NCBI RefSeq assembly: GCF_036588685.1
Contig: NC_086384.1
Span: 26,412,001 to 26,476,000 of the forward strand
Direction: 5' to 3'
DNA length: 64,000 nt
Origin: Mytilus trossulus
Lineage: Eukaryota
The notes under the pieces: generated by a model
The model's database searches: none
Seen by the model: only the letters and a program-made list of their open reading frames with translations
Told to the model about the DNA's origin: nothing
Shown here: one piece after another, positions 20,241 to 50,700 of the stretch
Position numbering within the stretch: position 1 is the first letter of the stretch
How the letters are laid out: each line of letters opens with the position of its first letter
Translations under genes and position numbers: made by a program

Positions 20241-23200
20241 ATGGCAGATGCTGATGTAGATGATGATTTCACCACAGGTGATGCCGGGTCTTCTGAAACA
20301 TACCCACAACAGTGTTCTGCTCTAAGGAAAAATGGACATGTTTGTATTAAAAACCGTCCATGCAAAATTGTGGAAATGTCAACTTCCAAGACAGGAAAAC
20401 ACGGTCATGCTAAGGTACATATCTCACATGCACACATATATATAATTTTAAATATTGGCTGATGTATTTACATTTATCATGTTTACATAAATGACTTCAT
20501 AAGACATTCTGTTATACTTATCTTTTACTTTGCCATCATTTTATAAACTGCTTCAGGACACTTAAATTTTACAGTTGTACATATGCATGTATTTTTTCAA
20601 ACGCATATTAACAATTGAATTGTAAAGTCTACCTACTTACCAGTTATAGTGAGATCTTGATGGTAATAGACAAACAATGACATTTTTTCAGAGAAAATGA
20701 TAGTAATGTGTTAAATTGTTTTCAGGTTCATATGGTTGGAATAGATATTTTCACTGGTAAAAAATATGAAGATATATGTCCATCTACACACAACATGAAT
20801 GTTCCTAATGTTATCAGAAAAGATTTTACGGTAATGTATTTCTAAACGATAGTTGCCACTTCAAATTTTTAGAATGCAGACTGTTTCAATCTAGCTTAGA
20901 AGTCATATCTATATATATGCCTCAATTTAAACAAAATTTGATATTTTAAGTCAGTTGTGGCTAAAACTATTAAATGCAAGTATACTTACTGGTGAATTCG
21001 GTACATTTTGATAATAATGGGGGTAGAGTTGTCTCCCATGGTCCTGATAGTTTGAACTTTAAAAGTAAAGAAAATCTTATGGGTAGCATTTAAAAATTAA
21101 TGTATATAACATATTTTGATTAGGCCTTATTTGCCATATCTGTGCATAGACATTAGGAATCCTTACTCTATTATTGAATTGTACATTTGTATCTTACAGA
21201 CAGAGTAAGTCGTACCACTTCTGTGGATTCATTATTATATATATATAGTTCAAAATCAGATATCATTGAAAATACAGTAAGTTAGTAAGCAATTTCCTCA
21301 CTTGAATAATTTGTAGCAAAAACCCAAAAAATAAATGAATCCTAATTATCTGCCATTGATGTTGAAAATTTAATTCCATATGACTTGGTTTGTATACGTA
21401 GTGCACATTATTATTTTAAATTATCTGAAGTAATTGAATTTTATTTTATTTTAGCTACTTGACATTAACGATGGTTTTCTATCTCTCATGGATGACAATG
21501 GTGAAACCCGTGAGGATGTAAAAGTACCAGACAATGATTTAGGAAAAGAAATTAAAGATAGATTTGAAAAGGATGAGCAACTTCTAGTAAGTGAAAATAT
21601 TGTGAATTTAAAATATAAAGTGTATAAACATATGTCTTTTTATTGACAATGTATATTGATCAATCAAATGGTCTTACCACATACATGACATAGGTGATTA
21701 TCAAGGAGTCATTTCTCAATAGCAAACCCCATTGGCATGTGAAGATTCATGTCTAAATGATTGGATGTATGCAATATCTAATAAGGTCATTATACAGCTA
21801 TCTACATTGAGAAAACCATATTGCTGTCAACCATAGATAGTGTTTTATTTAGACCTAAATATGGGCATCATATTTTTTTAACAAAAGGTCACTTTGTGCA
21901 TTGCCAATATCAAATAGGGCTCATGAATTAATAAGTTACACATATTAAGTTTTACTTATTGAAAAAGATAATGATAACATAAATTTAACAAAGTTAAGCT
22001 GGTACATAATATAATGATATATGTATGAGAGTCCCAGAGTTGAGCAACTTAAAAAAATATATTAAAACAATGCATCTACATTAACATATATACATTAATC
22101 ATGTTTTTACTTCATTTGAAAATTGTTGCTTATTTTTATTGCATCCTATGTATGCGAGATTTCAACTTTGTATTACAGGTTGTTTTATATGTCAAAATGC
22201 ACTGTTTTTATGTTATTTGTTTTTATATTCGGTCAAAAGCTTCTTAGAGCTTTAGTGTTTCCTGCAGCTTTTAAAAAGGGCAGGGTAATTGTTAGCTCAG
22301 AGGGCACATTAAGCGCGATGGACAACAATTTTAGGGCACTTACTTAACATAAACAGGCAATTTCTATAAAATGGATTCATTTAAAACATACTAGTTTAAT
22401 ACTATAAAAAGGACATATATACATCTGTAATCAATCATTAAATCAAATTGTTAAACAAGAAAAAGTGTTTAAAACATACATATATGAAATATTTAAAACA
22501 ATAAACACAATTAAAAACAAAATCAGTTCTTCAAAACTGTTTAAAAACTATGTCATATATATAAAAATATTGCTTTGGTCATATCAATTGTCATTGACAA
22601 ATCCTCCTTCCCCCCCCTAAAAACAGGTTGACACATGCATGATATCCAGGGTCATTTTTAGTAACCAAAATTTATTAAATTACAAAAAAAAATAACTTTA
22701 CAAATTAACCCCTTCCCCTCTACACCCTTTTCCAAATTAAATTAATATAGATACACCAAGTTTTACTACTTTCATGGCACTACCATATCAGCTGTTTATT
22801 TTAAATGTCTATAAATAGCCAGACATAGTTGTCTGTTACTTAGGTGTTTTCCCCAAGTATTTTTCCCGCTTAAAATGATCATGTGACATGTTTGTAAACA
22901 AAAGAAAACATTTGATCAAGGAATTCATTTATTTTCTGGATTATTCTGCTTTTAATAATTTAGTTTGGATTTTTATTCATTTCATTTAAGGTACAGTCAA
23001 GCATTTGTATTTAAAAAATAGTTTGCAAAGAATTTTTACTTTTCAATTTGACAAATGTCTCATGATCGCCGTTCATTGGCTTGTTTAACCATGCAAACAA
23101 TGTAAATTATGTAAATTAGAAATATATCAGATGTCAAAAGAATTGATCTAAGCATCACATCAATTTTATCATTAATCTTCTGGGCAAAACGATGTTTCTG

Positions 23201-25775
23201 GGACTTGGGGGATACAATCAGGACGCGTGATTAGTATCTGTATTCACTTTTGGCGTCCTAGTGAACTTTTGTTTTGAAGGGAAATAACTCGAGCGGTATT
23301 CATAAAATATGTCTTTCAGTACCGGTTGTTAATTACGACGATAAAGGCATGGCGTCAGGAATTTCGACAAAATAAGGGCAGGGCGCCAATTTTTTTTCCC
23401 AAAAAGGGCAGGGCGTCGAGAAATCGCGGCAGGGCGCCATTACACGCCAAAACCACCTGTAGGAAACACTAAGCTTGTGTTGCTTATTTGTACTTGTGCC
23501 AAATCAAAATAAAGTTTTCTTATCTTATCTTAATCAAGTTGATCTAACCAAAATTATGTTAATTCGTGTCAAATGCAAACTTTTTCAATATTCTTCCGTC
23601 AGCTGTGTCATTCGTGCATCCGTAGGCATTATCATAAGAACTGAGAATTAGAAATTTCTTCACTCCATGCTAATTTTCTTTAGATAAAAACACTTATAAA
23701 AGGCATGGTTTGACAAAAGTGTGAAACAATTCAAACACGAATACCAAAGACCTTATCTATGCTCAAAACAAAAATAATAGAAAGCAACCAATATGAATGG
23801 CTGTATTTCTGACTTGAAACAGGCTCACAATGAAGCTGTGGGATTAAAAATAGTTGTGAGAGCTTGACCCTTTAATGGGTTTAACTGTTAGTGTTTGTAA
23901 GAGCTTGACTCTTTAGTGGGTTTAACTGTTACAGTGTGTAAGTACAATCTAAGGCCAACCTTAAAAATATGTTTGTTTGCAGTTTTCCGACTGTACCTTC
24001 AGACTAGAGGGTCGGTAGGTAGGAAAAATATTTTATTTTATCAGCCAAAAAGTTTAAACAAGCAGTTACACAAACCAAGTTTCTTAAGAAAAAAAACAAC
24101 AAAGAAACACTGAAAACCAACATGAAATGAATAGGCATTGTCAGATAAAAAAAACTTTTTAACCAAAACTGAAATTTTAACATAGTGTGATTATCCAATT
24201 TATGACATAAAATATGTTCTTATTATATACTGAAACACTTATAAACAAGGAATGACTAGAACTGTTTTAAAGAAATATATTCACTGACATATATGCTTCT
24301 TGACTAGAATGTTTTCATAAGTAGAGTATTTTCATCAGAAAAAATGTAGATATTAAATATTAAGTAAACAAAGTATTTTAAAGAGTGTATTTTTAATAAA
24401 AAAAAAAATCAGCCATTGAATCTTCCTCAATTGAAAAGAAGGCAACTCAAAAAAGACTGTTTTCATATTTCTAACAATATTTAATTATATGTAATAAGGT
24501 TATATTTTGAAAGATATGTTGATGCCAGGCTTAAATGAAAACCAAAGAAAACTTGCTAGTTTGGGGTGAAATCCATAGCACCCCATTAAAGTAAACGGTC
24601 TGTACTGAAATGTTTTGACTGCATAAAAAAAATTGGCAGCATAGCTCCTAGGAACCTGTTTTAATTCAATTCACACAGGCCACAAAGTTTGGATTTATTT
24701 AATATTGTATAAAGAAAGAAAATAATTGCAATGAGTGGGGCAACTCCCCTTATCCTAAAGGAGCATACTCATTGCAATTCAAGATAGATTCAATATATAA
24801 TAGTATATTTATTTTTCAAGCTAATCATTTATTTTGTCTACATCTTTGTGAAGTTTGGGTTGATTTGGCATGGTCTCTATCCATTTACATTTCAAATGAG
24901 CTCTTTCTCCCTTTCTCCGTAAAGGCATGATAACATGTATCCATAAATTCATGGAGGAATGGTTTCATCTTTGTCTTCTTCACAACGATTTATAGAAAAT
25001 AAGACATACTTCAAGCTGCTGTCGAATTGTTTAACCACTGAAATTGGTTTATAAAGTCAGACTCCAAAGATTCTGTTCCCGATTTGTTTGAGACAGAAAG
25101 TTGTTGAGAAAGATGAGTTATCATGTCAGTTCTTCGTCTTCTTCAACATGTTCAATGATATCATCAAAGACATCATTTTATGTGCCTGAATCAGTTTACT
25201 ATTCAACTTGTTTGTTTGTTATTAGTCTTAGAATTGACAGAAGTCGACAGCGTAAAGTACTCCTCCATTTCTTCATGGATACCTGTAAACAATTTCCATG
25301 TGCTTTATCATTAAACGGTCACATGAACGCTTGACGGGAAGGCAAGAAAAACTGAACTTAAAACGTGTAATACACCTAGACTTAAACAACCAATTCCGGA
25401 AAGGACCCAAATTTCCGGATCTCGTCTATAGAAGTATTAAAAATAATTTCTTCAAATTTAAAGCAATAAAATTTTCACAGTCGGGAGGATTTTCAAGGGT
25501 CCGTCGGTAAACTGCAAACAAACAATATTTTAATTTAAGCCTAAACACTATTTGTAGATAACTGCCATATGATAACCCTGCATACAATCTGGTATTCATT
25601 TAAGGGAAACGCTACCAACACAAAACATAGGTGTTGTTTCAGCAGTTCTTTATTTGTAGAATAGAACACAATTTTAACAAACATTTTCATTATGTTATTC
25701 TTTATTTTTCAGATTACAGTTATTAAAGCTATGGGAGAAGAACTAGCTATTGCTATTAAAACTCAAACAAAGTAG
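20241..25775 (+). CDS. EIF5A: Eukaryotic translation factor eIF5A, canonical copy; coding exons 20241-20414, 20726-20830, 21455-21586, 25713-25775 (157 aa)
   Basis: Spliced translation [10 protein letters not shown]...[10 protein letters not shown]...[19 protein letters not shown]|[24 protein letters not shown]...|[23 protein letters not shown]...|[20 protein letters not shown]. All introns GT-AG and phase 0. Invariant hypusine motif intact (K53). Confidence 0.96.
22253..23471. mobile_element. Non-autonomous TIR element with 5-bp TSD in the last eIF5A intron
   Basis: TIR TAGTGTTTCCT(G/A)CAG; TSD AGCTT. Confidence 0.8.
23953..25541. mobile_element. Non-autonomous Harbinger-like element in the last eIF5A intron
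   Basis: Imperfect TIR of about 40 bp, GGC...TGTTTGTTTGCAGTTT.CCGAC; TAA TSD. Confidence 0.72.
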
Positions 25776-32189: not shown

Positions 32190-32570
32190 AATATATGTAT
32201 GTACATGTGTACATGTAGTTCTTAACAAATTGATGTAATATTCATTGATTTTCATTTTGAGAGGTTCTGATGAAAATTTATTCTTAAAATCACTTCTAAA
32301 ATACATGTATTATAGTCTTACAAACATGACAAATGTGCATAGTAAAACAACTAATACAATTGTTTTACCAATTTATAAATGTTTTTATCATTCATACAAC
32401 AATGTTCATTGTTTATAAAATAAGAGGATGTGGTTAAATTGGGAACGAGACAACTCTCAACCTAGATACTAACAAGTTAACAAATAAGTCACCATATAGC
32501 CTTCAACAATGAATTAAACCCATACCAAACAGTCAGCAGTACATGTATGTACAAACATCACAAATTCCTG

Positions 32571-34955
32571 TTATTTAACAAGTGGTTCTTGGAAATTAAC
32601 CAAGCAGCATGCTACAAAAACCATTTGGTCTGATATTTGTGTTAGTGATAATGGAATATTTCCACTCAGTAATTTAAATTTTTTTACTCTTTCAATCACT
32701 CTTTCTACATGTATTCTTGCTTTAGCAATACGACGGGTCTGCAACTCTTCCTGAGCAGTAAATTTAGACCTTTTTCCAAGAAAAGGCGGAATGTTAAGGG
32801 TTGCTTGTCTTGCCATTAGAAAATCTTCTATCAAAAAGCCTCGATCAGCCAGGACAAGATCACCTGGATTAATGTATTCCAAAAAGCCGCATTTTTCAAC
32901 AATTGCTCTATCACTTATAGATCCTTCATATAAATTAGACACATATACTATTGCACCATTTGGGGCTACTCCTATAAGACATTTATATGTATGATGACTT
33001 TTATACGAGGAATACAAATTTCCTTGACGACGAAAGTCTCGTGGCATTTGAACAAAAAATTCTGTACAGTCAATTGTGCATCGTATGTTTTTAAAACATC
33101 TGAAAACACGTGGCATATACTCTTTAAAGTGCTGACGCTCTGGAAACATAATATTTCTATAGTCATTAAAATGGCAATATAAAAACTGAATCCATGTTGT
33201 AAATATCACGCTAACTGTTGAAGATGAAACTCGAAAGAAGTGCGACATGACATCTAGATTGAATCCTCTTTTTAAGCGTACCAATGTTAGAAATAGTTCT
33301 TCTTTTGGCTCTAGTTTACGATTTCCTTTTTTCACATTTTCCTTTGTATTTTTACCATCCCAGTAAGTCAGTTTATTTACACTTTCACCAAGAAATTCAA
33401 ACAATGTCATAAATTGATTATATTGTAGTCCTGTAAATAATTTCAATCGTGCATCATCACTTTTCAAACTTTCTAATGATAGCATTGCATCAGAAGATGC
33501 ATTGTTATTTTCCTGATTTTGTTCTACTTTCATTTTGTTTTTTAATACCATGTTTTCAATCTTTGCATTTAGTATTTCTTTTCCATATACAGTTTGAACT
33601 TCCTTGTCATGTTGAATGCCTGATTCAGTTTGAACAGATTTCTCTTTATGTGTTTCACATTGAGCCAGTGTAGACTGTAAAAAAAAAAATCAAATAAATA
33701 TTAATAAACAAAAACATACATGTCAGACATATTTCCAATATTCAAGACTATACTTGCACTCAAATTATTATTAATACAGTTAGACAGTTGTTTCAATTAT
33801 TTCAACACACACAAGAATACATAACACTTGCACGACATGGTGCATGAAATAATAAATATATAATATAATTAAACATGTACATGTACCTGTAGTGCCCCTA
33901 TTTTTCTTCTTGCCTTTATCTAATATAAAGACAATTAATAACAATTTTATCTTACCGTTATTGATTCAGTACAATCCTTGTCAATACTTGGATCTGGTCC
34001 AGTGTATTCGGACAACTCAAGAAGACTTTCAGCTGCTGTAGTTACATCTTTTCTCAAGATTTTTACGTGTTGTTTTCTTGGTGTGGGAGCTTTTCTTTTC
34101 CGCTTAAAACGATTCATCTGTAATAATATAAAGTTAGGATAAAAAATTGTATAATATTGCATGCATTAAAAGTATCTTAGAATATTAATTGAGAAAACTT
34201 TTCCAGTGACGAACGACTGAAAGCTATAAATGGAAAAGTGTTTTGATATTAAATTTTGTGATTTTACTACCCTCCCTGCCTTTTCATTATCAGGGGAGGA
34301 ACATGTGTGATAATATACTTGTGCATTAAAATTCAACTTTACCCAAAATATACATGATATACAATAAATTCATATAAATAAACTTTCATTATATTTTTAT
34401 TTTTTACATTAAACTAATCAGGTATTATTAAGAATTAAAAAAGTATTTATTTACAAGTTCTAAAGTATATTGACAGTAAAGCACAAACAATAAAACTGAA
34501 ATGAAAATTATATAAAATTAGTTATATAAATAATTACTTATATGATGTTGATCAGGGTACAATTTACACAAAAATACGAAAATCACATTGTACATGTTGT
34601 TAACTGTCATGATTTGTAAAGGTAAACAATAAAATGCACCCACCTGGTCCTCGTTGTGCAACAGTGCAGGCAGTGGGTCCGGATGAAGTACGGTTGGCCC
34701 TTTACTACCGACGAAGTGTTTACTACACATGTATGTACAGCGTTTGATCTTTTCCACATTAAAATCCTCCTTGGGTCTCCCACATGCCTTAATCCAACGT
34801 TCACATTTCTCTCGTTGCGTGATGGGCTTTGGAAAAGGGATGAAAAACACATCCTTCATGTCATCACGATGTCTATATCTTGTGTCACTATTACATGTCC
34901 CGTAACAACAATGTTTCACACCTTCAGACTTATGTTTTACCGGAGCAACTTCCAT
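32571..34955 (-). CDS. THAP-HTH-DDE (DDE_Tnp_4-type) transposase; exons 34955-34644, 34117-33956, 33674-32571 (about 525 aa)
   Basis: THAP CCYGTC..FPKP..W..C..MCSKHF..P; HTH region LFLTLVRLKRG..F.VS.STVS; catalytic motifs IDCTE, LADRGF, RIHVERVI; phases compatible. Confidence 0.92.
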
Positions 34956-37903: not shown

Positions 37904-40900
37904 ATGAAAAACAAAAACAAAAGATCAAGGTAAGAAGAGTATAAAATAATTCAGAGTGAATATTTTTTATACCGGGAAAGAACGGATGCAGAGGCTAAAC
38001 ATTTTAAGAATTTTAAAATGATCAATTGCAAAAAAAATGAAAAGTTTCCGATAATTTGTTTTTATCTGTTTCATTACATAATATATGCTGCATGCACCCG
38101 TCGAATGCGTTTTTTAAATGAAAATTGCAAAGAAAAAAGGAGGGTTAGTTGTAAATAACAAAAATTCTCAAATCATTTCCAAAATGCCTATCATGATTAA
38201 CTAAAAGCTGCTTTGCACATGTATAAAATAACCAAATTAAAACCATTATATTTTGACATCTTTCTTTACTATACAGTGATTGCACCACCGTACGTGATAC
38301 ATACGGGTGCTCGTTGGAGAGAAATCGATAACTGCATAGTGATTTTTAAATATTTACATATACAACTGTATATATATCATGTAGACAAACATACTCGTAA
38401 TTAGGTCTTTCCACTTTTCGTGGAAAGACCTTTTGTTTTTCTTCTGGTTATAAGGTCTTTCCACTTTTCGTGGAAAGACCTTTTGTTTTTCTTCTGATTT
38501 TTTTTTTTTTTTTTTCTTCTGCCGTCTGAGATAAAATTGAGAATGGAAATGGGAAATGTGTCAAAGAGACAACAACCCGACCAAATAAAAAAACAACAGC
38601 AGAAGGTCACCAATAGGTCTTCAATGTAGCGAGAAATTCCCGCACCCGTAGGCGTCCTTCAGCTGGCCCCTAAACAAATATATACTAGTTCAGTGATAAT
38701 GAACGCCATACTAATTTCAAAATTGTACACAAGAAACTAATATAAAAATAATACAATACTAACAAAGGCCAGAGGCTCCTGACTTGGGACAGGCGCAAAA
38801 ATGCGGCGGGGTTAAACATGTTTGTGAGATCTCAACCCTCCCCCTATACCTCTAACCAATGTAGAAAAATAAACGCATAACAATACGCACATTAAAACTC
38901 AGTTCAAGAGAAGTCCGCGTCTGATGTCAGAAGATGTCACCAAAGAAAATAAACAAAATGACAATAATGCATAAATAACAACAGACTACTAGCAGTTAAC
39001 TGACATGCCAGCTCCTGACTTCAATTAAACTGACTGAAAGATTATGATTTCATCATATGAACATCAGACACAATACTTCCCGTTAGGGGTTTAGTATCAT
39101 ACCATCATAACATATGATTGGAAGCACATAACCCGTGTCATGCCAACAAATGTTTTTAGAATAAATGTCTTTAGTTCCGACGCAAAGACCTTATCAGTGA
39201 CTCAATATTAACGCCAAAATATGCAATCTTTAATGACTTGACAACAGTATCGTAATTATATCCCTTCTTAATCAGTCTATTTAAAGGTTTTGTAAGTTTC
39301 TGAGGTGAATACTGACACCTTTGTGCTTTATAAAGAATATTTCCATAAAAAATTGGATGTGAAATACCTGAACGTATAAAAAGTCTGCATGTTGAGCTAT
39401 ATTTCCGAATGATGTCTTTATACCGATGATAAAATTTAGTAAAAGTTTTGACTAGTTTGTGATATCGAAAACCCTGGTGTAATAATTTTAAAGTAATACA
39501 TAAATTTCTCTCGTTAAAATCTAAAACATTGTTACAAACACGAGCGAATCGTACAAGTTGAGATATATAAACACCGTAAGATGGTGACAAGGGAACGTCA
39601 CCATCTAAAAACGGATAATTAACGATAGGAAATGAAAAATCATCCCTTTTATCATAAATTTTAGTATTCAGCTTTCCGTTAGTGATATAGATATCAAGAT
39701 CGAGGAAAGGGCAGTGGTCATTATTAGTATTAGCTCTATTTAAAGAAAGTTCAGCAGGATAAATTTCATTAATACTGAAGTCGTCATTATTGAGAGCCAA
39801 AATATCATCCAAATATCTAAAAGTATTATTAAATTTGTTTATCAGATGTTGTTTTGATGGGTCTTTGCTTATTTTTGTCATAAATTGTAACTCATAACAA
39901 TACAAAAAGAGGTCCGCAATAAGTGGTGCACAGTTAGTCCCCATTGAAATTCCGATAATCTGACGATATACGGAATCCCCAAAGCGAACAAAAATGTTAT
40001 CTAGTAAAAGTAGGGCATATATAGTATCAAAGCATGTCAAATTAACATAGTTTTTTTGTTTATTGCTACTAAAAAATGACCTAAAAGAGTTTGAACATAT
40101 ATATTCACATTCTGATTTCACTGTGTCTAAACCACACCGGCAAAATTTGCTCGGACTCGATGCTATCTAACATCCGGCACAATGACGGAACACCAATAGA
40201 CAAAAGAAAGGTAGGTTTCTCCTTATTGTTTTATTCTTTTTATGATATCGAAGAATATATATACATATACAACTATTTTCTATTGTGAGATGCAATATTT
40301 TTTACAACCGTTCTATATTAACGGAGAAATAAGTCAAAATGCATGTCAAAATGACGAATTGAGTGAACCTTGCCTCGAAATTGTTTAATTTCTCGTTAAA
40401 TTTTTCTCATTGTACGGAAAGAAAGGTACGGGAAGATAGATATTGACACGGAGATTGCAAATTAAGTTATTATGAGCATCTCATTAATTGTATCTCTGTG
40501 TATGGAACGAAAGAAAAGGGTAATGTCAAATTAAAATAAACCGGTTTCGTCAATGTTGTTACTACACAATCACCCGGTTTCGTCTATATATATCACCCGG
40601 TTTGGTTGGTTTTTTTTAACAAACAATTTATGAAAAGCAACTTTGGCACGGATCTGAACATTGTATTTCGAGAATTTAAATATATATTTATTGTAAGGTA
40701 AACTTGGCGTGTTAAAATCTATTTTAAACAGGCACTTTTGGACATAGTTAATTATGATAATACACATTTTCCTAATGAAAGGCGTATCCCTTATTTCACT
40801 TAACTTCAAACTAATTTTTAATGGAATATAAATACTCAATAGCAAACACTGGTATCTAATTATTTTGTAACATTATTATATTTTCTTTGTTTATAATAGT

Positions 40901-43900
40901 AGTATGTAAAGATGAAAAATAAAAGTATGTGTTTTGATTGTGCCATAATTTTATTTTACTATACTAAATTATATACACTATGCATTCAATCATTGACGAA
41001 CAGTCCCAAACCGACTATAGTCTATACTGTTCTGCACAAGTTTATCATGCATGCAGTCCTGCCAGAGTTTCTGGTACTATATATACTGTGTTCCTTGCGC
41101 ACTAAAGCAAGTTTTCACACTTAAGCATCCATAACATAGCAATGAGATTTGTATCTTTCTCCCCGTTTCTGGTAGGCACATTTATTTTCCTATAGGCATG
41201 TTTTTCACATTATTTTTACAGTTCAAAATAAAAAAAATTACATTCCAAATTCATCTTTTTTACAGTTCGAATTCAATTGAAACTTCAAGATAACTTTCGA
41301 AAACAATATCTGACAGTATTGTATTTTCAATGTGAATAAAAGTTGGTTTGCAAAACATGACCGTCATTTATATCTAGGTCTTATTTAGAAAAAGTGACGG
41401 TAACCACTTATCCCATACACATTGACAATGAGACAACTTTCTTTTAGACACAAAAATGATGTTGAATTAATCAAGTTTAGGTCACCGTATGCTTTAAACA
41501 ATGAGAAAAACACACAAACCGCATGAAAGCAAGCTATAACAGGGTCCTAAATTATAAATGTAAAACAATTCAAACATAAAAACTACCTGCCTATTTTATG
41601 TTCAAAACACATATGGTATAAAGCAACCAAAGACAACCATGGAATAACAAGCCTCTGACTCGGGAAATGGACTGAGTCAAAGTGTTGTCGCTGACACAAA
41701 CAGTACAACAAAAGTACAAATAATAAAAAATGATGAATAAACCTTAACTCGTCCTATGACAGAGTCTTTATAGTGAATTCGCGATTTGTGCCAAAACTTG
41801 TATCATAGTTAAAATTATCCATTAAATATGATAAATATACATGTATTCGCAGTTTACTATGAAATCCACTATATCTGAACTAGTATACATATTTATTAAG
41901 GGACCAGCTAAAAGACACCACCAGATGCGGGAGTTTTTCGCTTCATTGAAGATCCATTGTGGCCTTCGGCTGTTTTCTGCTCTATGGTCGGGTTGTTGTC
42001 GCTTGGAATTTGTATGACTTTTTCATGTTTAAATGCCCCCCCCCCCCCCCCACAATTTTTGTTTTTGTTGTTTTACCAAAAAAAAATTCAATCCCTCTAA
42101 ACCAAAATTTTAAACATCACCAAAAAGTAAAAAGTAAACAGAAATTTATAGTATTTATATAACTAAGAAGTGTATAAAGTTTGATGCAGTTATAATACTT
42201 CTTTTTTGAGATATGGCGCGACATGTTAAAAAAAACCCACATTCCTGTTTCACTTACATGTTCTGCTTCATTGAAGACCCATTGTGGCCTTCGGCTGTTT
42301 TCTGCTCTATGGTCGGTTGTTGTCGCTTGGAATTTGTATGAATTTTTCATGTTTAAATGCCCCCCCCCCCCCACTTTTTGTTTTTGTTTTACCAAAAAAA
42401 AATCAATCCCTCTAAACCAAAATTTAAACATCACCAAAAAGTAAACAGAAATTTATAGTATTTATATAACTAAGAAGTGTATAAAGTTTGATGCAGTTAT
42501 AATACTTCGTTTTTGAGATATGGCGCGACATGTTAAAAAAACCCCACATTCCTTTTTCACGTACATGTTCTGTAACTCAAAAAGATTTAATTTGATTTTC
42601 ACTTAAAGGTTTACAGATCATGTTAAATTTTAAGAAAACAAGATAAGCTGTCCTGAAGTTACGGTGCGACATGTTTATGGTGGGCAGACGGATAGATAGA
42701 CGGACGGACGGACGGACGGACGGACAGAATGACTGATAGATGGAGGCACGGATGGATGGAAGGACGGACAGTAAGACGGGGGTATACAATAATACGGCCT
42801 GTCAAAATTGGGACGGGCGTGTAAAAACGCGAAGAAATGGAGAAAAAAATCGTAATTAAAGGTAAATATTTTTTATTCGGATATCGGCCAAGTCGATTTA
42901 GTTGTATAGTTGTCTGCCTTATCATTTTCCTATATAACTTTTATATATATTTGAAAAAAAATATGTATAGAAATCGATAAAAAGAACTTGATATTCGGCA
43001 TTTATTATGAGAAACATAATCCAACTGACATAATCCGATTTCCCGGGTGTCCCTGTTTTTCTCATTTCTTACAATATTTTAATTCGGTATACAATTTATA
43101 AGATAAGTGGCGAATCTGGATGACGTATATGTTGCACGCCCCGACCCCACCTTTGGTTTCCAAAACTTGATTGATTCCTGTATTTAAAGATTTTATAAAG
43201 CAAAAAATAATCAAAATATTGTTCGACTCGCTACGCTCGGCCGTAGGTAAAAGTTGTTCGAAATACGCCCACTTTGAAATAAACTGAATACGTCTGTCCG
43301 TATATATTGTCCGTATATATTGATCAACATCAGTGTACGATCATCATAACACAATGGCGACAGTGCAGACTCGTTTTTTTTTAATAATGTTAACAAAATA
43401 ATTATTATTGAATTGTATAGATGACCTGAGACTATTATACTAATTTGTACATAGCAGTATAGTGATAAATAAATTGTATTTTAATGCATGGTAGTTGTAA
43501 CCCTACATTCGTTTTCTATGCCGATTATGCATGCATATACATTTGTCTTATTATCAACGTTTATCCTTAAGAAGATTTATTTTTAACGATGGTAGAAAAG
43601 ATTACATACATGGAATGATTAGATTACTTATAAAGGTGTCCATTCTTTTGTGCGAGAAAATCACATATCAATTGTGTGTTTCGATTTTTAAGACCGTAAA
43701 CTTTAATTTCAAGTTTAAAATTGTTCAACATATTTTCCCATAACTCATATAGAAAAAACATATTTAGAGAGCTTTAATCGCAATATGCTGTTAAAAAATT
43801 TCGGAATGCAAAGTAAAACTAAAATATATGTGTCGGCTATAAGAGTATGAATTTGCTAATTATTTATTTGAATCTGAGACTCATATAAATAATAAGCCGC

Positions 43901-46900
43901 TGTCCGGTGAACAACTTGTTTTCGAACGACCCACAAAACTCCTTTTGAACACTGAAGTTAAATAATCAGTTCTAATGTAATGCGATTATGATTTTTTTTA
44001 TTTGACCAAACCGGGTTATGCATTTTGAAATCTATGACGAAACCGGGTTGTATACATTGACGAAACCGGCCAGTTTGATTTTAACATGACCCATTTCTTT
44101 CGTTCCATACACAGAGTTACAATTATTGAGATGCTCATAATAACTAAATTTGCAATCTCCGTGTCAATATCTATCTTCCCGTACCTTTCTTTCCGTACAA
44201 TGTGAACAATTTAACGAGAAATTAAACAATTTCGAGGCAAGGTTCACTCAATTCGTCATTTTGACATGCATTTTGACTTATTTCTCCGTTAATAGAGAAC
44301 GGTTGTAGAAAATATTGCATCTCACAATAGAAAATAGTTGTATATGTATATATATTCTTCGATATCATAAAAAGAATAAAACAATAAGGAGAAACCTACC
44401 TTTCTTTTGTCTATTGGTGTTCCGTCATTGTGCCGGATGTTAGATAGCATCGAGTCCGAGCAAATTTTGCCGGTGTGGTTTAGACACAGTGGATTTTTTG
44501 AATGCCCATTTAATTAGGTGTGTGAATTTTTTCTTAATGAGAATGTGAGGCAATGTGGTATACAGGGTAGAAAAATCAAAACTTTGAACAGATTCAAAAT
44601 CACCAATATGAGCATGCAATTTATCAAGTACTTCCAACGAGTTCTTGACACTCCAAAAGTAATTTATTCCACTATTTTCGAAGGCCTTATTTGAACAATT
44701 TATTATAAGGTTTTTAATTGTACCAAGTGTGAGATGCTTTTTTGTTTTACAACATATCGAATGGATGTTTGGCCAATGATGTTGTTCAGTAATGGAGGTT
44801 TCAAAACTCACCCTGTGTGACCGAACACTTATTCTTATAGGAGTTATCTCCCCGCGTCTCTTTTTTCTTGTTATCGCTATATCTCTATAACCGTAAAAGA
44901 TTTTTACAAACTGTTTTCACCAAATTGTTCGTCTACTCTTAGGAATGATTTGTTTTACTTTGACTGAGGTGATCAGAAGACATCTTATGTGAGTTATTTC
45001 CGTTTGAAATTTAAAATAAACGACATGTTGGGTTCATTCATACAGTATAATTTGTAGAGGCCTACAGTCTTTTGATATGAAGTCCTTGGTCCATATAAAG
45101 GAAATTGAGGTTAAAGTCAAAGGTCAAGGTCATGTTATAAATTTTGAATTTTGCTTGTTATCGTTATTCGAAAGAAACTGTAACAGTTAATGATATGATA
45201 TGTTTGCAAAATCACTGTTTACAATAAGGCACAACTTCAACTTATTCAGTCGAAGTGTTTTGGTTACCCCTTATAGGAGTTTTCTCCCCTTATGTATTTG
45301 AAATCATTATTTCTCCACAACCATACAAGTGATTGACCTCGGACCTTCTAATTTGAGTTCACTGACCCATGACCTTGAAATTGAGGTCAAGGTCAAAGGT
45401 CAAGGTCATGTTATAATTTTTTGAATTTTGCTTGTTATCGTTTTTCAAAAGAAACTGTTACAGTTAGTGATATGATGTGTTTGCCAAATTACTGTTTACA
45501 ATAAGGCGCAACTTTAACCTATTTAAGTCGAAGTGTTTTGGTTAACCCTTTTAGGAGTTTTCTCCCCTTTTGTATTTGAAATAATTATTTCTCCACAACC
45601 ATACAAGTGATTGACCTGGGGCCTTCCTATTTGAGTTCACTGACCTATGACCTTGAATTTGAGGTCAAGGTTGAATGTCAAGGTCATATTCTATATTTTG
45701 GAATTTGCTTGTTATCTATATTCAAAAGAAATTGTAACAGTTAATGATACGATGTGTTTGCCAAATAACTGTTTACAACAAGGGGCAACTTCAACCCATT
45801 TAAGTGGATGTGCTTTGGTCAACCCTTTTAGGAATTTTCTCCCCTTTTATATTTGAAATCGATATTTCTCTTCAACCATACAAGTGATTGACCTGGGGTC
45901 TTTTGATTTGAGATCACTGACCTATGACCTTGAGGTCAAGGTCAAAGGTCAACTTGACGTTTTAGATTTTGACCTTTGCTTTAAATTCTTTCTTGTTCAT
46001 TATAAAATAATTAAGTCTTTTGCATTTACCAATTTTTTTTTTAAATCAGTTTGAGGTACTAAATTACATCAACAAGGAGTGACCTTTTCTAAAATCTTGT
46101 TTAAAATTTCATTCTTAATATCGAGGTGGAAAGACCTTCAATTGTTCTCTGAAGAATTGGTTTTTAATTATTAATAAAGTTATTCAATTTAGTAGTAGTA
46201 AGGAAAATATACCTTAAGTATGCTACATCTCAAAATGCTGGCATCATTTTTTTTAATAGAAAATTTAAATAAGGAAAAATAAGACGTAGGGATACGTATA
46301 TATGGAGCCACTGAAGGACAAGAAAGCCGTTAGAGCCAAACGAATATTTATTTGTAAAATACCACCAGTTTTTTTTGGCCGAGCTTTCAAAGTTGCTTAA
46401 AATGCATCTTCTTCGCTAAAGTTTCATATCTCCTATCTGAATATCTGAGATATTTAATATTTCAGCGCTCGCAAGGAAGCAGCAGCCATTGTTATCAATG
46501 ACGAGGAGGAATTTGAGCAGGGGGATGCTGGAGCATCTAGTACTTACCCAGAACAATGCTCCAGTCTGAGGAAAGGAGGTCATGTTCTACTGAAGAATCG
46601 TCCTTGTAAGATAGTAGAGATGTCTACATCCGCCCCAGGAAAGCATGGACACGCAAAGGTATGGCAATAGTACTTCCCGCCACAAACACCGATATAATTT
46701 TATCGTACAGAAATATGAACGTCTATAAAGCAAATATTGTTGTCTCTTTGACACATTCCCCATTCCCATTCTCAATTTTATTCTCACCAAGTAATTTTAC
46801 ATATGGGGCCCCACTAGCAAATTTGGCTAATGTCTATCTGATTAGTAATGTCCCAGCACTGTAAATGCGTATGTGTAGTATACAATGAGTTGATGTGACA

Positions 46901-48829
46901 ATACAACTTAACTAATAATGTATACAGAACCACTTTCTTTTTTTACAGGTGGTTACCTTTGTTTTCTTTTATAGTCAAATCTTCTCTGTTTGTCATGTTT
47001 ACAGGTTCATCTCATTGGATTGGATCTGTTCACTGGAAAGAAGTACGAAGACATTTGTCCAGCACACCATAACATGGATGTTCCTAATGTCAAACGTCTG
47101 GAATATCAGGTGGGGACACTTATTGTAAACACCAAGTATAATAAATATAAGTAGGAAACTGAGAGTTTACTATCAGATCGGTACTTTGTGTCAATAGTAA
47201 TTTGTTATTTTGTAAGTTGTTTTTATTTGACATCAACATGTTTGCGTTGATATAATGAAAAAAGGGGCCAAACAGCAAAAACAATAATTCTAGATTCCGG
47301 ACCATAACTTGAGTTTTGTTTGAAATTGTACTACAAGGTTCAATACCACAAAAGGAAGGTTTGGTTAGATTTCGCGGTTATGATACGTCCGTATTCGCTT
47401 AGGAATAAGTTACCTACACGAACATAAAAAAAAGAGAACTATGTTATGTCCAATTGTCAATCACAATCCAAATTCAGTGCCGCAGCTGTTCATGGTTCAA
47501 TCTCTGTGGTCGTATCAGGCTTCTCCCCGCGGAGTATTTTATCCAATATAGTGACATGGAAGGCCGGTTAACTCATTTGTATAAAATACATTTCGAAACT
47601 GATAGGTTCGATTTCGGGAAATCTAGATTAATGTTTAATGATAATTGGCACAGTTGTCATTGGTCTCTGGTGGAGTGTTGTCTATTAAACAAGGATACCA
47701 CATCTTCTTTATTTCATATTTTGTTTTGGCTGTTCGTTTGACCTTAATTAGCATTAAATGGTTCAAAGTTTTTAAAAATATGTATAACAATTGCTATGTT
47801 TTGTCATTTTTAGATTGTTAATGTTAGCCGTGATGGGTATTTGACAATAATGGATGACAAAGGTCAACTTCGCAGTGATATCAAGATCGAGGAGGATGAT
47901 GACCTTGGAAAAGAGATTAAGGTCAAATTTGAAAAAGATGAAGATTTTATGGTACGTTATAGCACTTGTTTTATATATTTATACTTCAGTCATTTTTCGC
48001 GGTTTTCGTTCATGTTTCACAAAATTAGGTTTGATTTTTAGATGTCATAAATTATACCTTCTAAATGTGGAGGAGTTTTGCAATTACCGTGTCCGTACGA
48101 CAGAAATTTTCATCACAAGTTTTTCAGAAACTTAAGAGAACGACTGCATATTTGGGTCAGTATGACCATCTTTAACGGCTTAATTTATAGGCAACAGTTT
48201 GTTTTTGCTATAAAAAAAAAAAAAAAAAATCTTATTTTTTTAATTCCTCTAAGGCAGTTTTTTTACAACCACTAAACGTGCAAACAACTTATAAAAACGC
48301 TGGAAAGTTGAAACATGGATCCCCATGTTAGAGATATTTAATGCCATGAGTGTTGTGTGGCCAGGTTATGTTCAACTGCTGTATGACTAGCCTGTCAACT
48401 GAGGTTGTAAGTTCGAAACCCGAAACCCGCACGTGGCACTGAGGTGCATTCGACTGTCAGTTTTCTCGCCGAAAGTCAGTGGTTTTCTGAATCACCTGAC
48501 TTTCTGGCTTCCTCAACCAATAAAAAAATGACCGCCACGAATTAGCCAAAAAATGCTGGAAGTGGCATAAAACACTAAACATCATTCAATCATTATCAAT
48601 AAACCATGATTATTTTTTGTTGTACACCGATAGATAATTACTTGAGTTTATACTTTTCCATAAAAGTAAATTTGTATTGCTATATTTTATCAAATCCTGT
48701 TAAATACCTGACCTGAAATTAGTAATTTACAAATATTGTGACATTTTGTCTTTTTATTTTCAGGTCTCCGTCATCACTGCTATGGACGAGGAGAAGGTCA
48801 TAGCAATGAAAGCTATTAAACAACCTTGA
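37904..48829 (+). CDS. EIF5A: Divergent eIF5A paralog; exons 37904-37929 (predicted), 46466-46658, 47005-47109, 47814-47951, 48764-48829 (about 175 aa)
   Basis: Translation (MKNKNKRSS)[64 protein letters not shown]|[35 protein letters not shown]|[22 protein letters not shown]...|[21 protein letters not shown]. Same three intron positions as copy 1, no stops, AATAAA at 49052. The first exon is inferred from phase-2 compatibility (AG|gtaaga) and is less certain than the last four. Confidence 0.88.
39052..39118 (-). promoter_or_regulatory. Type-2 SECIS element in the retroelement 3' UTR
   Basis: AUCAUAUG-UU-AUGAU-GGUAUGAUACU-AAA-CCCCUAACGGG-A-AGUAUUGUGUC-UGAU-GUU-CAUAUGAU: helix I, AUGA/GA core, 11-bp helix II, AAA bulge, apical mini-stem. 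Confidence 0.8.
41940..42575. repeat. Direct duplication of about 320 bp
   Basis: 41940-42264 is repeated at 42265-42575. Confidence 0.85.
42686..42830 (-). repeat. (GACG/GATG)n microsatellite with a HINE-like 5' end
   Basis: Tetranucleotide run next to a small inverted repeat ending in a T-run on the minus strand; a similar end occurs at 51265-51330(+). Confidence 0.6.
48343..48575 (+). repeat. Degenerate tRNA-derived SINE-like repeat
   Basis: A-box-like TGGCCAGG and B-box-like GTTCGAAAC; similar tail at about 35470-35610. Confidence 0.4.
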
Positions 48830-49289
48830 CTCTTTTTATCTCTTTTATACTCATCACTAATTCTATCCAAATAGGATAATACAAATTCCTAATGAGGATC
48901 ACAACCGGATCACATACATATAATTAACTCTGCAACGAGGAGTTTTAGGTGAAGGAAGGATAGGGAAGTAACAGAAAGTGAAGAGAGAGAATAACAAAAA
49001 AAAAAACTTTCATATTCTTTTATCTAATCACACATTCTATCTTCTAATTTAAATAAAATTATTACACTTAACCAGTTTTGTTACTTCTTAGCATTTTCTT
49101 GGCTAAAAGATGAAAGATATTGAAGGTGTCCAAATTTCCAAGAGTTACGATCCAGTCCCCTGCCTTCGGAGAAGACTAGATCGTAAAATTTGGCTATTTC
49201 ATGAGCATTAGCTAGCAAAGATGCTTTACTTCATATACGACTTGGAATAATGGCACAAATAGTGATCGCAATAATTGTTTGTTGTCACC

Positions 49290-50700
49290 TTTTTGTCGAG
49301 CCTACATTCCGTCGTCGGCGGCGTCTACAAATATTCACTCTGTGGTTAAAGTTTTTTAAAAGGAGTAGGTCCAGTAAGACCCCTTTTTGGCCCCAAAATA
49401 AAGCAGTTTTACAAAATTGTTAAAATGTAAACTTTTAGTTATTTATTGGATAGTAGAATTGTTCTGCTACATAAATATGGGCTGTTTTTGACGTTACAAT
49501 GCACATATATTGGGTACTAGCACCATTAAGTCACGCTAAATTACTGAAATATTCAAAATTCCAGCATTTTAGTTAAATTTCAGACGGTTTCCGTGTAAAA
49601 CGAAAGTGGCCGCATTCGTGTTCATCCAAAATATTGAAATGGAAGTTGTATTTGATAATAATACATAACATATATAAAGATTGAGGATGAACACAAATGC
49701 GGCCAATTTAATTTTTGACAAAAACCATCTAAAAAATGACATTTTTTCGCATATTTGGTTGATTTTTCATATTTGAGCTTGAATCGGAGCGTGTTTAATG
49801 ATGAAACCAGTTGAAATCTTTCATATATATTATTTGAATCAAATGAAATGGAAACTTAAGTGTATAAAAAGTGGTCAAAATCTTTCGTCAGATGAAACTG
49901 AAATTTGAGTCCAAAATCGGTCCTTACCGGACCTACTCCTTTAATAACTTTCTTAAACTATACTGGATTTCTACCAAACATGGACAGAAGCTTGTTTATG
50001 ATCATAAGATAGTATCAAGAAGTACAGTTTGCAAAAATAAAATTCCATTTTTTCTGTTTTTTACTTATAAATGGACTTAGTTTTTCTGCGGGGAAACATA
50101 ACATTCACTCTGTGGTTAAAGTTTTTAAAATTTTAATAACTTTCTTTAACTATTCTGGGTTTGTACCAAACTTGGACAGAAGCTTGTTTATGATCATGAG
50201 ATAGTATCCAGAAGTAAATTTTGTAAAAAAATCAATCCATTTTCTCCGTATTATACTTTTAAATGGACTAAGGGTTTTTGCCAGGAAACAACACATTCAC
50301 TCTGTGGTTAAATTTTTTTTTGAAATTTAATAACTTTCTCATACTTTTTTAAATTTGTACCAAACTTGGACAGAAGCTTGTTTATGATCAAAAGCTAGTA
50401 TCTAGAAAGGAAATTTTGTCAATATTTGGTACCTGTGTATCTGTATTTTACTTATAAATGGACTTAGTTTTTCTTCCAGTTAATTTTACATACAGTCTGC
50501 AGTTGAAGTTTTTTAAACATTTATTCGATTCATAAACTATCCTGAAATTTTCACCAAACTTGGACAGAAGCTTCTTACAATCTCAAGATAGTATCAAGAG
50601 GAATATTTTTATTGATTGTTTTCCTCATTTTTGTTGAGCCTGGGAGTTACAGCAAAAGTAGGCGAGACACTGGGTTCCGCGGAACCCTTATAATTTTTTT
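49290..50700 (+). mobile_element. HINE-like element with tandem internal units
   Basis: 5' TTTTTGTCGAGCCT; 3' AGGCGAGAC plus hairpin GGGTTCCGCGGAACCC; repeated ACCAAACTTGGACAGAAGCTTG units. Confidence 0.65.
49361..49940. mobile_element. Kolobok-like MITE
   Basis: TIR AGGAGTAGGTCC(A/G)GTAAG at a TTAA-type site; a degenerate reverse copy lies at about 60380-60770. Confidence 0.7.

What the first reader, a model, noticed from the sequence alone, without database searches (positions are those of the whole stretch)
46466..48829. Intact eIF5A paralog with a rewired hypusine loop ([12 protein letters not shown])
Seen: an uninterrupted, correctly spliced second eIF5A next to a canonical one. The nearly invariant eukaryotic [12 protein letters not shown] becomes [18 protein letters not shown] becomes PAHHNM and AMGEE becomes AMDEE, while the target lysine (codon 46641-46643) is kept. 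Known: the lost Lys matches human K47, an acetylation site, and a Pro-Gly-Lys loop is what bacterial EF-P and many archaeal aIF5A carry. Inference: a specialised translation factor with altered DHS/DOHH modification, regulation or stall-motif preference, possibly tissue-specific.
Basis: partly seen in the sequence, partly recalled or inferred. Interest (0 to 1): 0.82.

Follow-up and report, generated by a model that had tools for sequence, protein, structure and literature searches.

The report
Divergent eIF5A paralog in mussels
The mussel genome carries, 12 kb downstream of its ordinary eIF5A gene (about 26 kb between the main coding exons), a second, transcribed and conserved eIF5A gene with two changed residues beside the hypusine lysine and a short basic tail; it is in databases but undescribed.

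Summary
Exons 46466-46658, 47005-47109, 47814-47951 and 48764-48829 are open, GT-AG bounded and encode an eIF5A with loop [18 protein letters not shown] and AMDEE. The Lys codon is at 46641-46643.

One correction: 46466 is not the start of the coding sequence. That exon has no in-frame ATG. The start lies 8.5 kb upstream (37904-37929, MKNKNKRS). The five-exon model (175 aa) is identical to RefSeq XP_063410607.1, "eIF5A-1-like" of Mytilus trossulus.

The same loop occurs in M. edulis, M. galloprovincialis and M. californianus. Spliced contigs occur in runs of three organisms. Sea-star proteins share a basic N-terminal tail and an A/Q-P-G-K loop.

The copy is old: 60% identity to its neighbour, with synonymous sites saturated. 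Its core is invariant among mussels. The genome has one deoxyhypusine synthase locus.

Whether the mussel and sea-star genes share one origin is unresolved, because the supporting clade dissolves when the trait columns are dropped.

The function is inferred: probably a hypusinated E-site factor without the K47 acetylation switch.

I found no paper on it. The scan noted the N-terminal exon separately on this same window (s1-830481).

Verdict: a real gene and a new variant of a known kind, of moderate interest.

The parts
37904..37929 (+). First coding exon of the paralog (coding part only; the 5' UTR start is not mapped). It encodes MKNKNKRS plus the first two bases of a Ser codon; the donor is AG|GTAAGA.
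   Evidence: Sequence. Joining it to 46466 gives a 175-aa protein identical to P0225 = XP_063410607.1. The same N-terminus is in the transcript-derived Logan protein P0235.
37930..46465 (+). Intron 1 (8.5 kb), full of repeats. It holds a minus-strand SECIS-like element at 39054-39116 that belongs to something else.
   Evidence: very high repeat depth. Two RNA-type contigs retain its last 150-220 bases.
46466..46658 (+). Exon 2: the rest of the N-terminal tail ([18 protein letters not shown]), then the SH3-like N-domain up to the hypusine loop.
   Evidence: Pfam PF21485 E 2.6e-21; spliced joint 46658|47005 in contigs of runs X1, X3 and X18.
46623..46658 (+). Hypusine-loop codons [12 protein letters not shown]: Ala 46632-34 (human K47), Pro 46635-37 (human T48), target Lys 46641-43 (human K50).
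   Evidence: Read directly; aligned to the canonical copy and to human eIF5A.
47005..47109 (+). Exon 3 (105 nt, the same length as in the canonical copy); it holds CPAHHNM.
47814..47951 (+). Exon 4: the first part of the OB-fold C-domain (DDKGQLRSD).
   Evidence: Pfam PF01287 E 4.9e-11.
48764..48829 (+). Exon 5, coding part ([21 protein letters not shown], stop TGA). The 3' UTR continues to at least 48988.
   Evidence: contigs reach 48959 (X1) and 48988 (X3).
20241..25775 (+). Canonical eIF5A gene, coding exons 20241-20414, 20726-20830, 21455-21586 and 25713-25775. It is the tandem neighbour and the reference for the comparison.
   Evidence: Its translation is identical to P0231 = XP_063410609.1 (157 aa).

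Best explanation
This is a functional, transcribed second eIF5A gene of a Mytilus mussel; the protein is identical to the M. trossulus RefSeq entry. It lies in tandem with the canonical gene and has the same intron positions, so it arose by DNA-level duplication, long ago. The protein keeps the two-domain eIF5A fold and the G-K-H-G-H-A-K core around the modifiable lysine. Three things are changed. The basic residue two positions before that core is lost (K47 to Ala). The next residue is Pro instead of Thr, as in archaeal aIF5A. A disordered, basic N-terminal tail is added from a separate upstream exon. Inferred mechanism, not shown: the single deoxyhypusine synthase of the genome still modifies it, and it works at the ribosomal E site like eIF5A. 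It would escape the K47 acetylation switch that governs nuclear/cytoplasmic distribution of eIF5A in mammals, and it would have different affinity for DHS, ribosome or transport factors because of the Pro-stiffened loop and the basic tail. It belongs to a small, so far undescribed set of animal eIF5A paralogs with a basic N-terminal tail and an x-P-G-K loop, also seen in sea stars.
For: Gene model and identity. The five-exon model equals XP_063410607.1 exactly.

Family and fold. Pfam domains match. The AF2 model has mean pLDDT 85.8, residues 1-29 are disordered, and TM reaches 0.94 with rmsd 1.3-1.5 A to solved eIF5A structures. PDB eIF5A matches at E 3e-62.

Expression. Contigs with introns removed occur in runs of three coded organisms. 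The genome has no retrocopy, only two eIF5A loci. Logan protein P0235 comes from 13 contigs and includes the exon-1 peptide.

Conservation. [12 protein letters not shown] is present in every Mytilus copy of this paralog retrieved (M. trossulus, M. edulis, M. galloprovincialis, M. californianus and a Logan transcript protein; 9 loop matches, one of them in the fusion model P0234). In the seven aligned copies 17 of 176 columns vary; 8 of them lie in the first 28 residues and none lies between residues 55 and 110.

Age. Identity to the neighbour is 60%, pS is 0.82 (saturated) and dN is 0.31.

Relatives. Acanthaster, Patiria and Asterias proteins have an MPRKTKAS.. tail and Q/A-P-G-K loops. They score 270-322 bits on the subfamily profile (Mytilus copies 333-334), against 262 or less for canonical proteins.

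Modification context. There is one DHS locus. The peptide P-G-K-H-G-S-A-K of Haloferax aIF5A is about 99% deoxyhypusinylated (PMC5178350).
Against: No direct evidence of hypusination, ribosome binding or tissue pattern. In human eIF5A, K47 is listed among residues important for hypusine formation (PMC7191727). T48N lowers hypusination and causes disease (PMC7864902). DHS N173 contacts the main chain at T48 (PMC10042821). The two changes could therefore weaken modification rather than merely tune it. Two of the spliced contigs retain the end of intron 1 and cannot encode the full protein.
Confidence: 0.65

Rival explanations
1. Hypusine-poor or hypusine-free regulator. The loop changes disable efficient DHS recognition, and the protein acts in its lysine form. 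The basic tail would serve as a nuclear-import signal, for example for a nuclear or RNA-binding role, or the protein would compete with canonical eIF5A for DHS or exportins.
For: K47 and T48 are positions where human substitutions reduce hypusination (PMC7191727; PMC7864902; PMC10042821). Unhypusinated eIF5A is found in the nucleus as well as the cytoplasm, and the first 19 residues of human eIF5A1 act as a nuclear localisation signal (PMC7191727). The added tail is Lys/Arg-rich and disordered.
Against: G-K-H-G-H-A-K is strictly kept in all Mytilus and sea-star members. That is hard to explain if the lysine were never modified. P-G-K-H-G is a good DHS substrate in archaea. Several fungal eIF5As carry K/R-P-G-K.
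Confidence: 0.2
2. Question of origin, not of function: the mussel gene is a duplicate that arose within the mollusc or mytilid lineage, and its likeness to the sea-star paralogs (loop, basic tail) is convergent.
For: It sits in tandem with the canonical gene and shares its intron positions. When the loop, CPxx and AMx columns and the N-terminus are dropped, the joint clade appears in 0% of bootstrap trees. A clade of all Mytilus eIF5As is not rejected (AU p 0.17). The mussel paralog is 52-56% identical to the sea-star paralogs but 62-65% to canonical eIF5As. No such protein surfaced from oysters, scallops or clams in the profile search.
Against: The full-column tree joins them at 96/93, and that clade is not rejected without the trait columns (AU p 0.41). 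They share rare states outside the loop: the tail pattern M-x-x-K-x-[KR]-x-S, G46 and K124. Elysia chlorotica has a second eIF5A with an MQRK.. tail and KGHLRYDI against the mussel KGQLRSDI. Synonymous sites against the neighbour are saturated.
Confidence: 0.38
3. A decaying or non-functional duplicate (pseudogene) that happens still to be open.
For: Two contigs retain intron 1 sequence.
Against: The upstream exon supplies the ATG, and the model equals a RefSeq protein. The frame is open in at least four species and in sea-star relatives. The core is invariant. The duplicate is old (saturated pS) yet intact. Spliced transcripts exist (P0235).
Confidence: 0.03

Closest known systems
Canonical eIF5A (EIF5A1 type; here the neighbour at 20241-25775, XP_063410609.1)
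   Same: The same two Pfam domains, the same fold, the same intron positions, the same G-K-H-G-H-A-K core and target lysine.
   Different: 60% identity only. K47 is Ala, T48 is Pro, S/T in CPSTH are A/H, and G in AMGEE is Asp. It carries an 18-residue net N-terminal extension with a basic start from an extra exon. GC3 is 0.40 against 0.22.
Second eIF5A genes of vertebrates and yeast (EIF5A2, TIF51B/ANB1)
   Same: A second, differently used gene copy of eIF5A. GenBank OPL21245.1 even calls the mussel protein '5a-2'.
   Different: Those paralogs are 84-90% identical to the main copy and are regarded as interchangeable (bioRxiv 10.64898/2026.07.17.739231). The EIF5A2 proteins retrieved here keep the canonical loop. 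Vertebrate 5A1 and 5A2 form their own clade at 99/98, away from the mussel gene, so it is not an EIF5A2 ortholog.
Archaeal aIF5A
   Same: A Pro-Gly-Lys-His-Gly loop. In Haloferax volcanii the peptide PGKHGSAK is about 99% deoxyhypusinylated (PMC5178350).
   Different: Only about 25% identity. There is no basic N-terminal tail. The mussel protein sits among eukaryotic eIF5As in every search, so the likeness is limited to the loop.
Bacterial EF-P
   Same: A KOW/SH3-like domain I with a P-G-K tip. The paralog exon gives a weak EFP_N match (E 0.0033, below the cut-off); the canonical exon gave none at E 0.01 or better.
   Different: EF-P has three domains and other modifications. From established knowledge these are beta-lysylation, rhamnosylation and 5-aminopentanolylation; this was not tested here.
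Human eIF5A1 isoform A (30-residue N-terminal extension)
   Same: An N-terminal extension supplied by an upstream exon. It changes localisation to mitochondria in the human case (PMC8705083).
   Different: In human it is an alternative isoform of the main gene, with an unrelated sequence. Here it is the only annotated form of a separate gene, and it is Lys-rich.
Sea-star 'eIF5A-1-like' proteins (Acanthaster planci, Patiria miniata, Asterias amurensis); possibly Elysia chlorotica RUS80057.1
   Same: A basic tail starting M-x-x-K-x-K/R-x-S, RKGGHV, a non-basic residue plus Pro before G-K-H-G-H-A-K, K-G-x-x-R-S-D in the C-domain, and Asp in A-M-D.
   Different: Only 52-56% identical to the mussel protein. 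A single origin is not demonstrated. The Elysia protein keeps Lys and has Val instead of Pro.
Fungal Hex1 (Woronin body protein)
   Same: An eIF5A-derived paralog with a new role. It matches the query at E 1.6e-8.
   Different: Hex1 is a structural, self-assembling protein of fungi, and its fold match is poor (TM 0.47). The mussel protein is a close eIF5A.

Membership tests
eIF5A (eukaryotic translation factor 5A) | N-terminal SH3-like domain (Pfam IF5A-like_N) followed by the OB-fold domain (Pfam eIF-5a) | tested here: met
   Exon-wise Pfam hits at E 2.6e-21, 1.3e-7 and 4.9e-11, all above the cut-off. Both domains are precomputed for the Mytilus orthologs.
eIF5A (eukaryotic translation factor 5A) | Three-dimensional fold of eIF5A | tested here: met
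   AF2 model with pLDDT 85.8. Foldseek top hits are all eIF5A, with TM up to 0.94 and rmsd 1.3-1.5 A.
eIF5A (eukaryotic translation factor 5A) | Modifiable lysine in a G-K-H-G-H-A-K context at the tip of the loop | tested here: met
   Codons 46638-46658. G67, K68, H69, G70 and K73 are invariant and H71 and A72 nearly invariant (90% or more) in a 40-sequence alignment.
eIF5A (eukaryotic translation factor 5A) | Canonical loop prefix S-T-S-K-T (basic residue at human 47, Thr at 48) | tested here: not met
   It reads S-T-S-A-P. By comparison, 312 of about 330 retrieved eIF5A loops read [11 protein letters not shown]. The family assignment stands on the other features; this one marks the variant.
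eIF5A (eukaryotic translation factor 5A) | Hypusine actually formed by DHS and DOHH | not testable with these tools
   Only context is available: one DHS locus in the genome, and a P-G-K-H-G loop is modified in Haloferax.
eIF5A (eukaryotic translation factor 5A) | Binds the ribosomal E site and relieves stalling | not testable with these tools
Vertebrate-type EIF5A2 | Orthology to the vertebrate EIF5A2 duplicate | tested here: not met
   Vertebrate 5A1 and 5A2 sequences form one clade at 99/98 that excludes the mussel paralog. The GenBank label '5a-2' is a name only.
Archaeal aIF5A / bacterial EF-P | Overall sequence kinship rather than the loop motif alone | tested here: not met
   PDB aIF5A matches at E 1e-12 against 3e-62 for eIF5A. 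The EFP_N match scores 17.8 bits, below the 23-bit cut-off.
Proposed animal subfamily 'basic-tailed x-P-G-K eIF5A' | One origin of the mussel and sea-star genes | tested here: inconclusive
   The clade has 96/93 support with all columns. It appears in 0% of bootstraps with the trait columns dropped. Neither that clade nor the rival all-Mytilus clade is rejected by AU tests (p 0.41 and 0.17).

The most novel reading that the evidence does not exclude
The mussel gene, the sea-star genes and perhaps the second Elysia gene would be survivors of one ancient bilaterian duplication. That would make a third class of animal eIF5A, with its own loop chemistry (no basic residue at 47, Pro at 48, as in archaea) and a basic N-terminal tail, lost in vertebrates, insects and most other lineages. 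If the origins are instead independent, the same loop and tail were reached twice, which would point to a specific selected function.
Probability: 0.45. Interest if true: 0.72.

Novelty: new variant of a known kind. Interest (0 to 1): 0.55.

Why it matters
eIF5A is the only protein known to carry hypusine, and its loop is among the most constrained sequences in eukaryotes. A single change at T48 causes a human developmental disorder. Here nature offers a conserved, expressed animal eIF5A that changes both K47 and T48 while keeping the lysine. That allows a direct test of what these two residues do for DHS/DOHH recognition, for acetylation control and for ribosome function. It also asks why mussels and sea stars keep such a copy. 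Finally, it shows that 'eIF5A-1-like' database labels hide a distinct subfamily.

Tried and rejected
1. I looked for the start codon in the exon at 46466. There is none in frame. The ATG at 46498 is one base out of frame, and the upstream ATG at 46302 heads a 32-codon ORF that ends at 46400.

2. I considered that the one extra base in RNA contigs X1 and X3 (413 reference bases against 414 contig bases within 46244-46656) shifts the frame so that ATG 46498 is used. I rejected this as the main reading. The window frame is homologous to the N-terminal tails of other species, and the RefSeq protein equals the window translation. The position of the extra base was not shown by the tool and stays open.

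3. The word search with exon 2 alone is limited to proteins of 35-112 aa. It found no close ortholog, but it did find four fragments with x-P-G-K loops that led to the full-length relatives.

4. The large representative search added nothing. At 50% clustering the paralogs are merged with canonical eIF5A; the top score was 254 bits against 316-334 for true subfamily members.

I therefore could not fetch ortholog DNA, sea-star gene structure or synteny, and I could not compute a codon-based dN/dS between species.

6. Cano et al. 2008 (PMC2536608) is not held. Its result is cited only through a review.

7. The organisms behind fragments P0009, P0086/P0113, P0092, P0103 and P0414 could not be named.

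8. The joined spliced protein was built only inside scripts from the window file. Remote searches used single exons by reference and, the database protein P0225, which is identical to the model.
Full report
THE OBSERVATION. The stretch 46466-48829 holds four exons (46466-46658, 47005-47109, 47814-47951, 48764-48829). Each is preceded by a pyrimidine-rich tract and AG and followed by GT, and they join into one open frame that ends in TGA at 48827-29. The translation is an eIF5A. The exons match Pfam IF5A-like_N (E 2.6e-21 and 1.3e-7) and the eIF-5a OB domain (E 4.9e-11). A canonical copy lies upstream on the same strand, with coding exons 20241-20414, 20726-20830, 21455-21586 and 25713-25775. 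It reads [18 protein letters not shown] and AMGEE. A six-frame search of the whole 1.30-Gb assembly finds only these two loci. The window has no N.

A CORRECTION TO THE GENE MODEL. The exon that begins at 46466 has no in-frame ATG. The frame reads ...TAA(46455-57) Y F S|[22 protein letters not shown], and the nearby ATG at 46498 is out of frame. At 37904-37929 there is ATG AAA AAC AAA AAC AAA AGA TCA AG|GTAAGA, whose two last bases complete a Ser codon with the C at 46466. Joined inside a script, the five exons give a 175-residue protein. It is identical, residue for residue, to P0225 = XP_063410607.1, 'eukaryotic translation initiation factor 5A-1-like [Mytilus trossulus]'. The canonical copy equals XP_063410609.1 of the same species. 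The window is therefore most likely M. trossulus, and the gene is already a RefSeq model. The joined model was never typed into a search tool. Remote searches used single exons by reference and later P0225.

TRANSCRIPTION. The run search listed 24 runs from three coded organisms that hold about a fifth of the words of 43600-49400, which is the size of the exons plus UTR. Laying four of the runs shows an 899-nt contig (X1, no mismatches) and an 867-nt contig (X3). The listed pieces of both cover exons 2, 3 and 5 with the introns gone, and an unlisted stretch of about 139 nt in each matches the length of exon 4. The joint 46658|47005 is seen in X1, X3 and X18. Since the genome has no retrocopy, these contigs come from RNA. 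Both long contigs, however, run unspliced from exon 2 back into intron 1, to 46244 and 46314. Both also carry one extra base relative to the window somewhere in that piece. Such RNAs cannot encode the full protein, so they are retained-intron or internally started forms. The position of the extra base is not shown by the tool. The productive form does exist: the Logan-derived protein P0235 (174 aa, 13 contigs) starts MKNKNKGSRARKE... and spans all five exons.

NOT PRIVATE TO THIS ASSEMBLY. The exon-2 word search could only see proteins of 35-112 aa. Among 111 hits it found four fragments with x-P-G-K-H-G loops. One of their cluster mates, P0113, is full length (150 aa). A profile built from these and from the window exons retrieved the Mytilus proteins. 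The cluster listing gives the same paralog in M. trossulus, M. edulis (CAG2186168.1, XP_071145869.1), M. galloprovincialis (OPL21245.1, XP_076085681.1) and M. californianus (XP_052072167.1). All carry [18 protein letters not shown] and AMDEE. Among seven Mytilus sequences, 17 of 176 columns vary. Eight of these lie in the first 28 residues, three are singletons in the N-domain, six lie in the C-domain, and none lies between residues 55 and 110. This is the pattern of a constrained protein with a freer tail.

AGE. Against its neighbour the paralog is 60% identical. The proportion of synonymous differences is 0.82, beyond correction, and dN is 0.31. GC3 differs, 0.40 against 0.22. Intron positions are the same, and exon 3 is 105 nt in both. 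The gene is thus an old DNA-level duplicate, not a recent copy and not a retrogene.

RELATIVES OUTSIDE MUSSELS. A profile of the variant proteins scores 333-334 bits on the Mytilus paralogs, 322 and 316 on the sea stars Acanthaster planci and Patiria miniata, and 270 on Asterias amurensis. Canonical eIF5As of any animal score 262 or less. The sea-star proteins begin MPRKT[KR]AS[KR]K... and have loops [12 protein letters not shown] or [12 protein letters not shown]. They share with the mussel protein several states that are rare in 26 canonical sequences: the tail pattern M-x-x-K-x-[KR]-x-S, Gly in R-K-G-G-H-V, Pro at position 48, and Lys in D-x-K-G. Elysia chlorotica has a second eIF5A (RUS80057.1) with a tail MQRKGDQK.., R-K-G-G-H-V and K-G-H-L-R-Y-D-I (mussel: K-G-Q-L-R-S-D-I), but its loop is S-S-K-V-G-K. 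Branchiostoma floridae has yet another divergent copy, with T-T-E-G-G-K-H-G-G-E-K. Pro at 48 alone is not unique: K-P-G-K or R-P-G-K occur in some fungal eIF5As.

ONE ORIGIN OR TWO? A maximum-likelihood tree of 37 proteins joins mussel, sea-star and P0113 variants at 96/93. That signal sits in the traits themselves. With the loop, CPxx and AMx columns and the N-terminus removed, no bootstrap tree has the clade, although an AU test does not reject it (p 0.41). The rival, all Mytilus eIF5As as one clade, is not rejected either (p 0.17). Adding four long divergent rows lowers support to 80/69. Overall similarity does not help: the mussel paralog is 52-56% identical to the sea-star paralogs but 62-65% to canonical proteins. 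I rate a single ancient origin at about 0.45-0.5 and convergence at about 0.38.

STRUCTURE AND LIKELY WORKING. An AlphaFold2 model has mean pLDDT 85.8. Residues 30-175 take the eIF5A fold (TM up to 0.94, rmsd 1.3-1.5 A to ribosome-bound and exportin-bound eIF5A), and residues 1-29 are disordered. The papers read here bear on the two changed loop positions:
- K47 is acetylated by PCAF and deacetylated by HDAC6 and SIRT2, and acetylation drives nuclear accumulation (PMC7191727, PMC8705083).
- K47, H51, G52 and K55 are listed as important for hypusine formation (Cano et al. 2008, cited through PMC7191727).
- DHS N173 contacts the main chain at T48, and the loop 46-SKTGKHGHA-54 enters the DHS tunnel (PMC10042821).
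- T48N lowers hypusination and causes a developmental disorder (PMC7864902).
- On the other side, the Haloferax aIF5A peptide P-G-K-H-G-S-A-K is about 99% deoxyhypusinylated (PMC5178350).
- The genome has a single DHS locus.

Shown here: fold, conservation, transcription and the strictly kept G-K-H-G-H-A-K. Inferred: the protein is still modified and acts at the E site. It would lack the K47 acetylation switch and have a Pro-stiffened loop and a basic tail, which could alter its affinity for DHS, ribosome or transport receptors. The main functional rival is a poorly modified or unmodified form with a nuclear or regulatory role (0.2). A pseudogene is practically excluded (0.03).

WHAT IS KNOWN. 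Searches of the held literature for eIF5A with Mytilus, with sea stars, and with paralog, phylogeny or invertebrate terms found nothing on this gene or on such a subfamily. One gill proteome paper lists an 'eIF5A like' spot without further detail. A 2026 preprint restates the usual view that eIF5A paralogs are 84-90% identical and interchangeable. The gene is thus known to databases but undescribed. I class it as a new variant of a known kind, of moderate interest.

LIMITS. There is no tissue information, no modification data and no codon-level selection test between species. The organisms of several fragments are unnamed. The literature library is incomplete.

Noticed in passing
window 46244-46465: Two spliced RNA-type contigs (X1 899 nt, X3 867 nt) retain the last 150-220 bases of intron 1 and carry one extra base relative to the window somewhere in 46314-46656. 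This is a retained intron or an internal start. The position of the extra base was not shown.
   Followed up: partly
window 39054-39116 (-): An Rfam SECIS_1 match (39.3 bits, gathering score 35) on the minus strand inside intron 1 of the paralog. It lies just 3' of a minus-strand ORF 39171-40121 (316 aa) that has no Pfam match.
   Followed up: partly
window 30471-34955: Mobile-element genes lie between the two eIF5A genes: a 572-aa ORF with a YqaJ-like exonuclease domain (+), a 326-aa PIF/Harbinger-type transposase with DDE_Tnp_4 and HTH_Tnp_4 (-), and a THAP-domain ORF (-).
   Followed up: partly
window 46737-46782 and about 49359: A short repeat core of extreme abundance (summed contig depth 10^4 to 10^6 in all four runs), with loose ends on both sides. 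It lies in intron 2 and downstream of the gene.
   Followed up: no
P0234 (GenBank VDH94685.1, M. galloprovincialis, 324 aa): A public gene model fuses the canonical eIF5A and the paralog into one protein. This fusion is why the 90% cluster mixes the two genes.
   Followed up: yes
P0362 (Elysia chlorotica RUS80057.1) and P0426 (Branchiostoma floridae XP_035673140.1): Further divergent second eIF5A genes with altered loops (SSKVGKHGHAK; TTEGGKHGGEK). The Elysia protein also has a basic MQRK.. start. Divergent eIF5A copies may be commoner in marine invertebrates than the literature suggests.
   Followed up: partly
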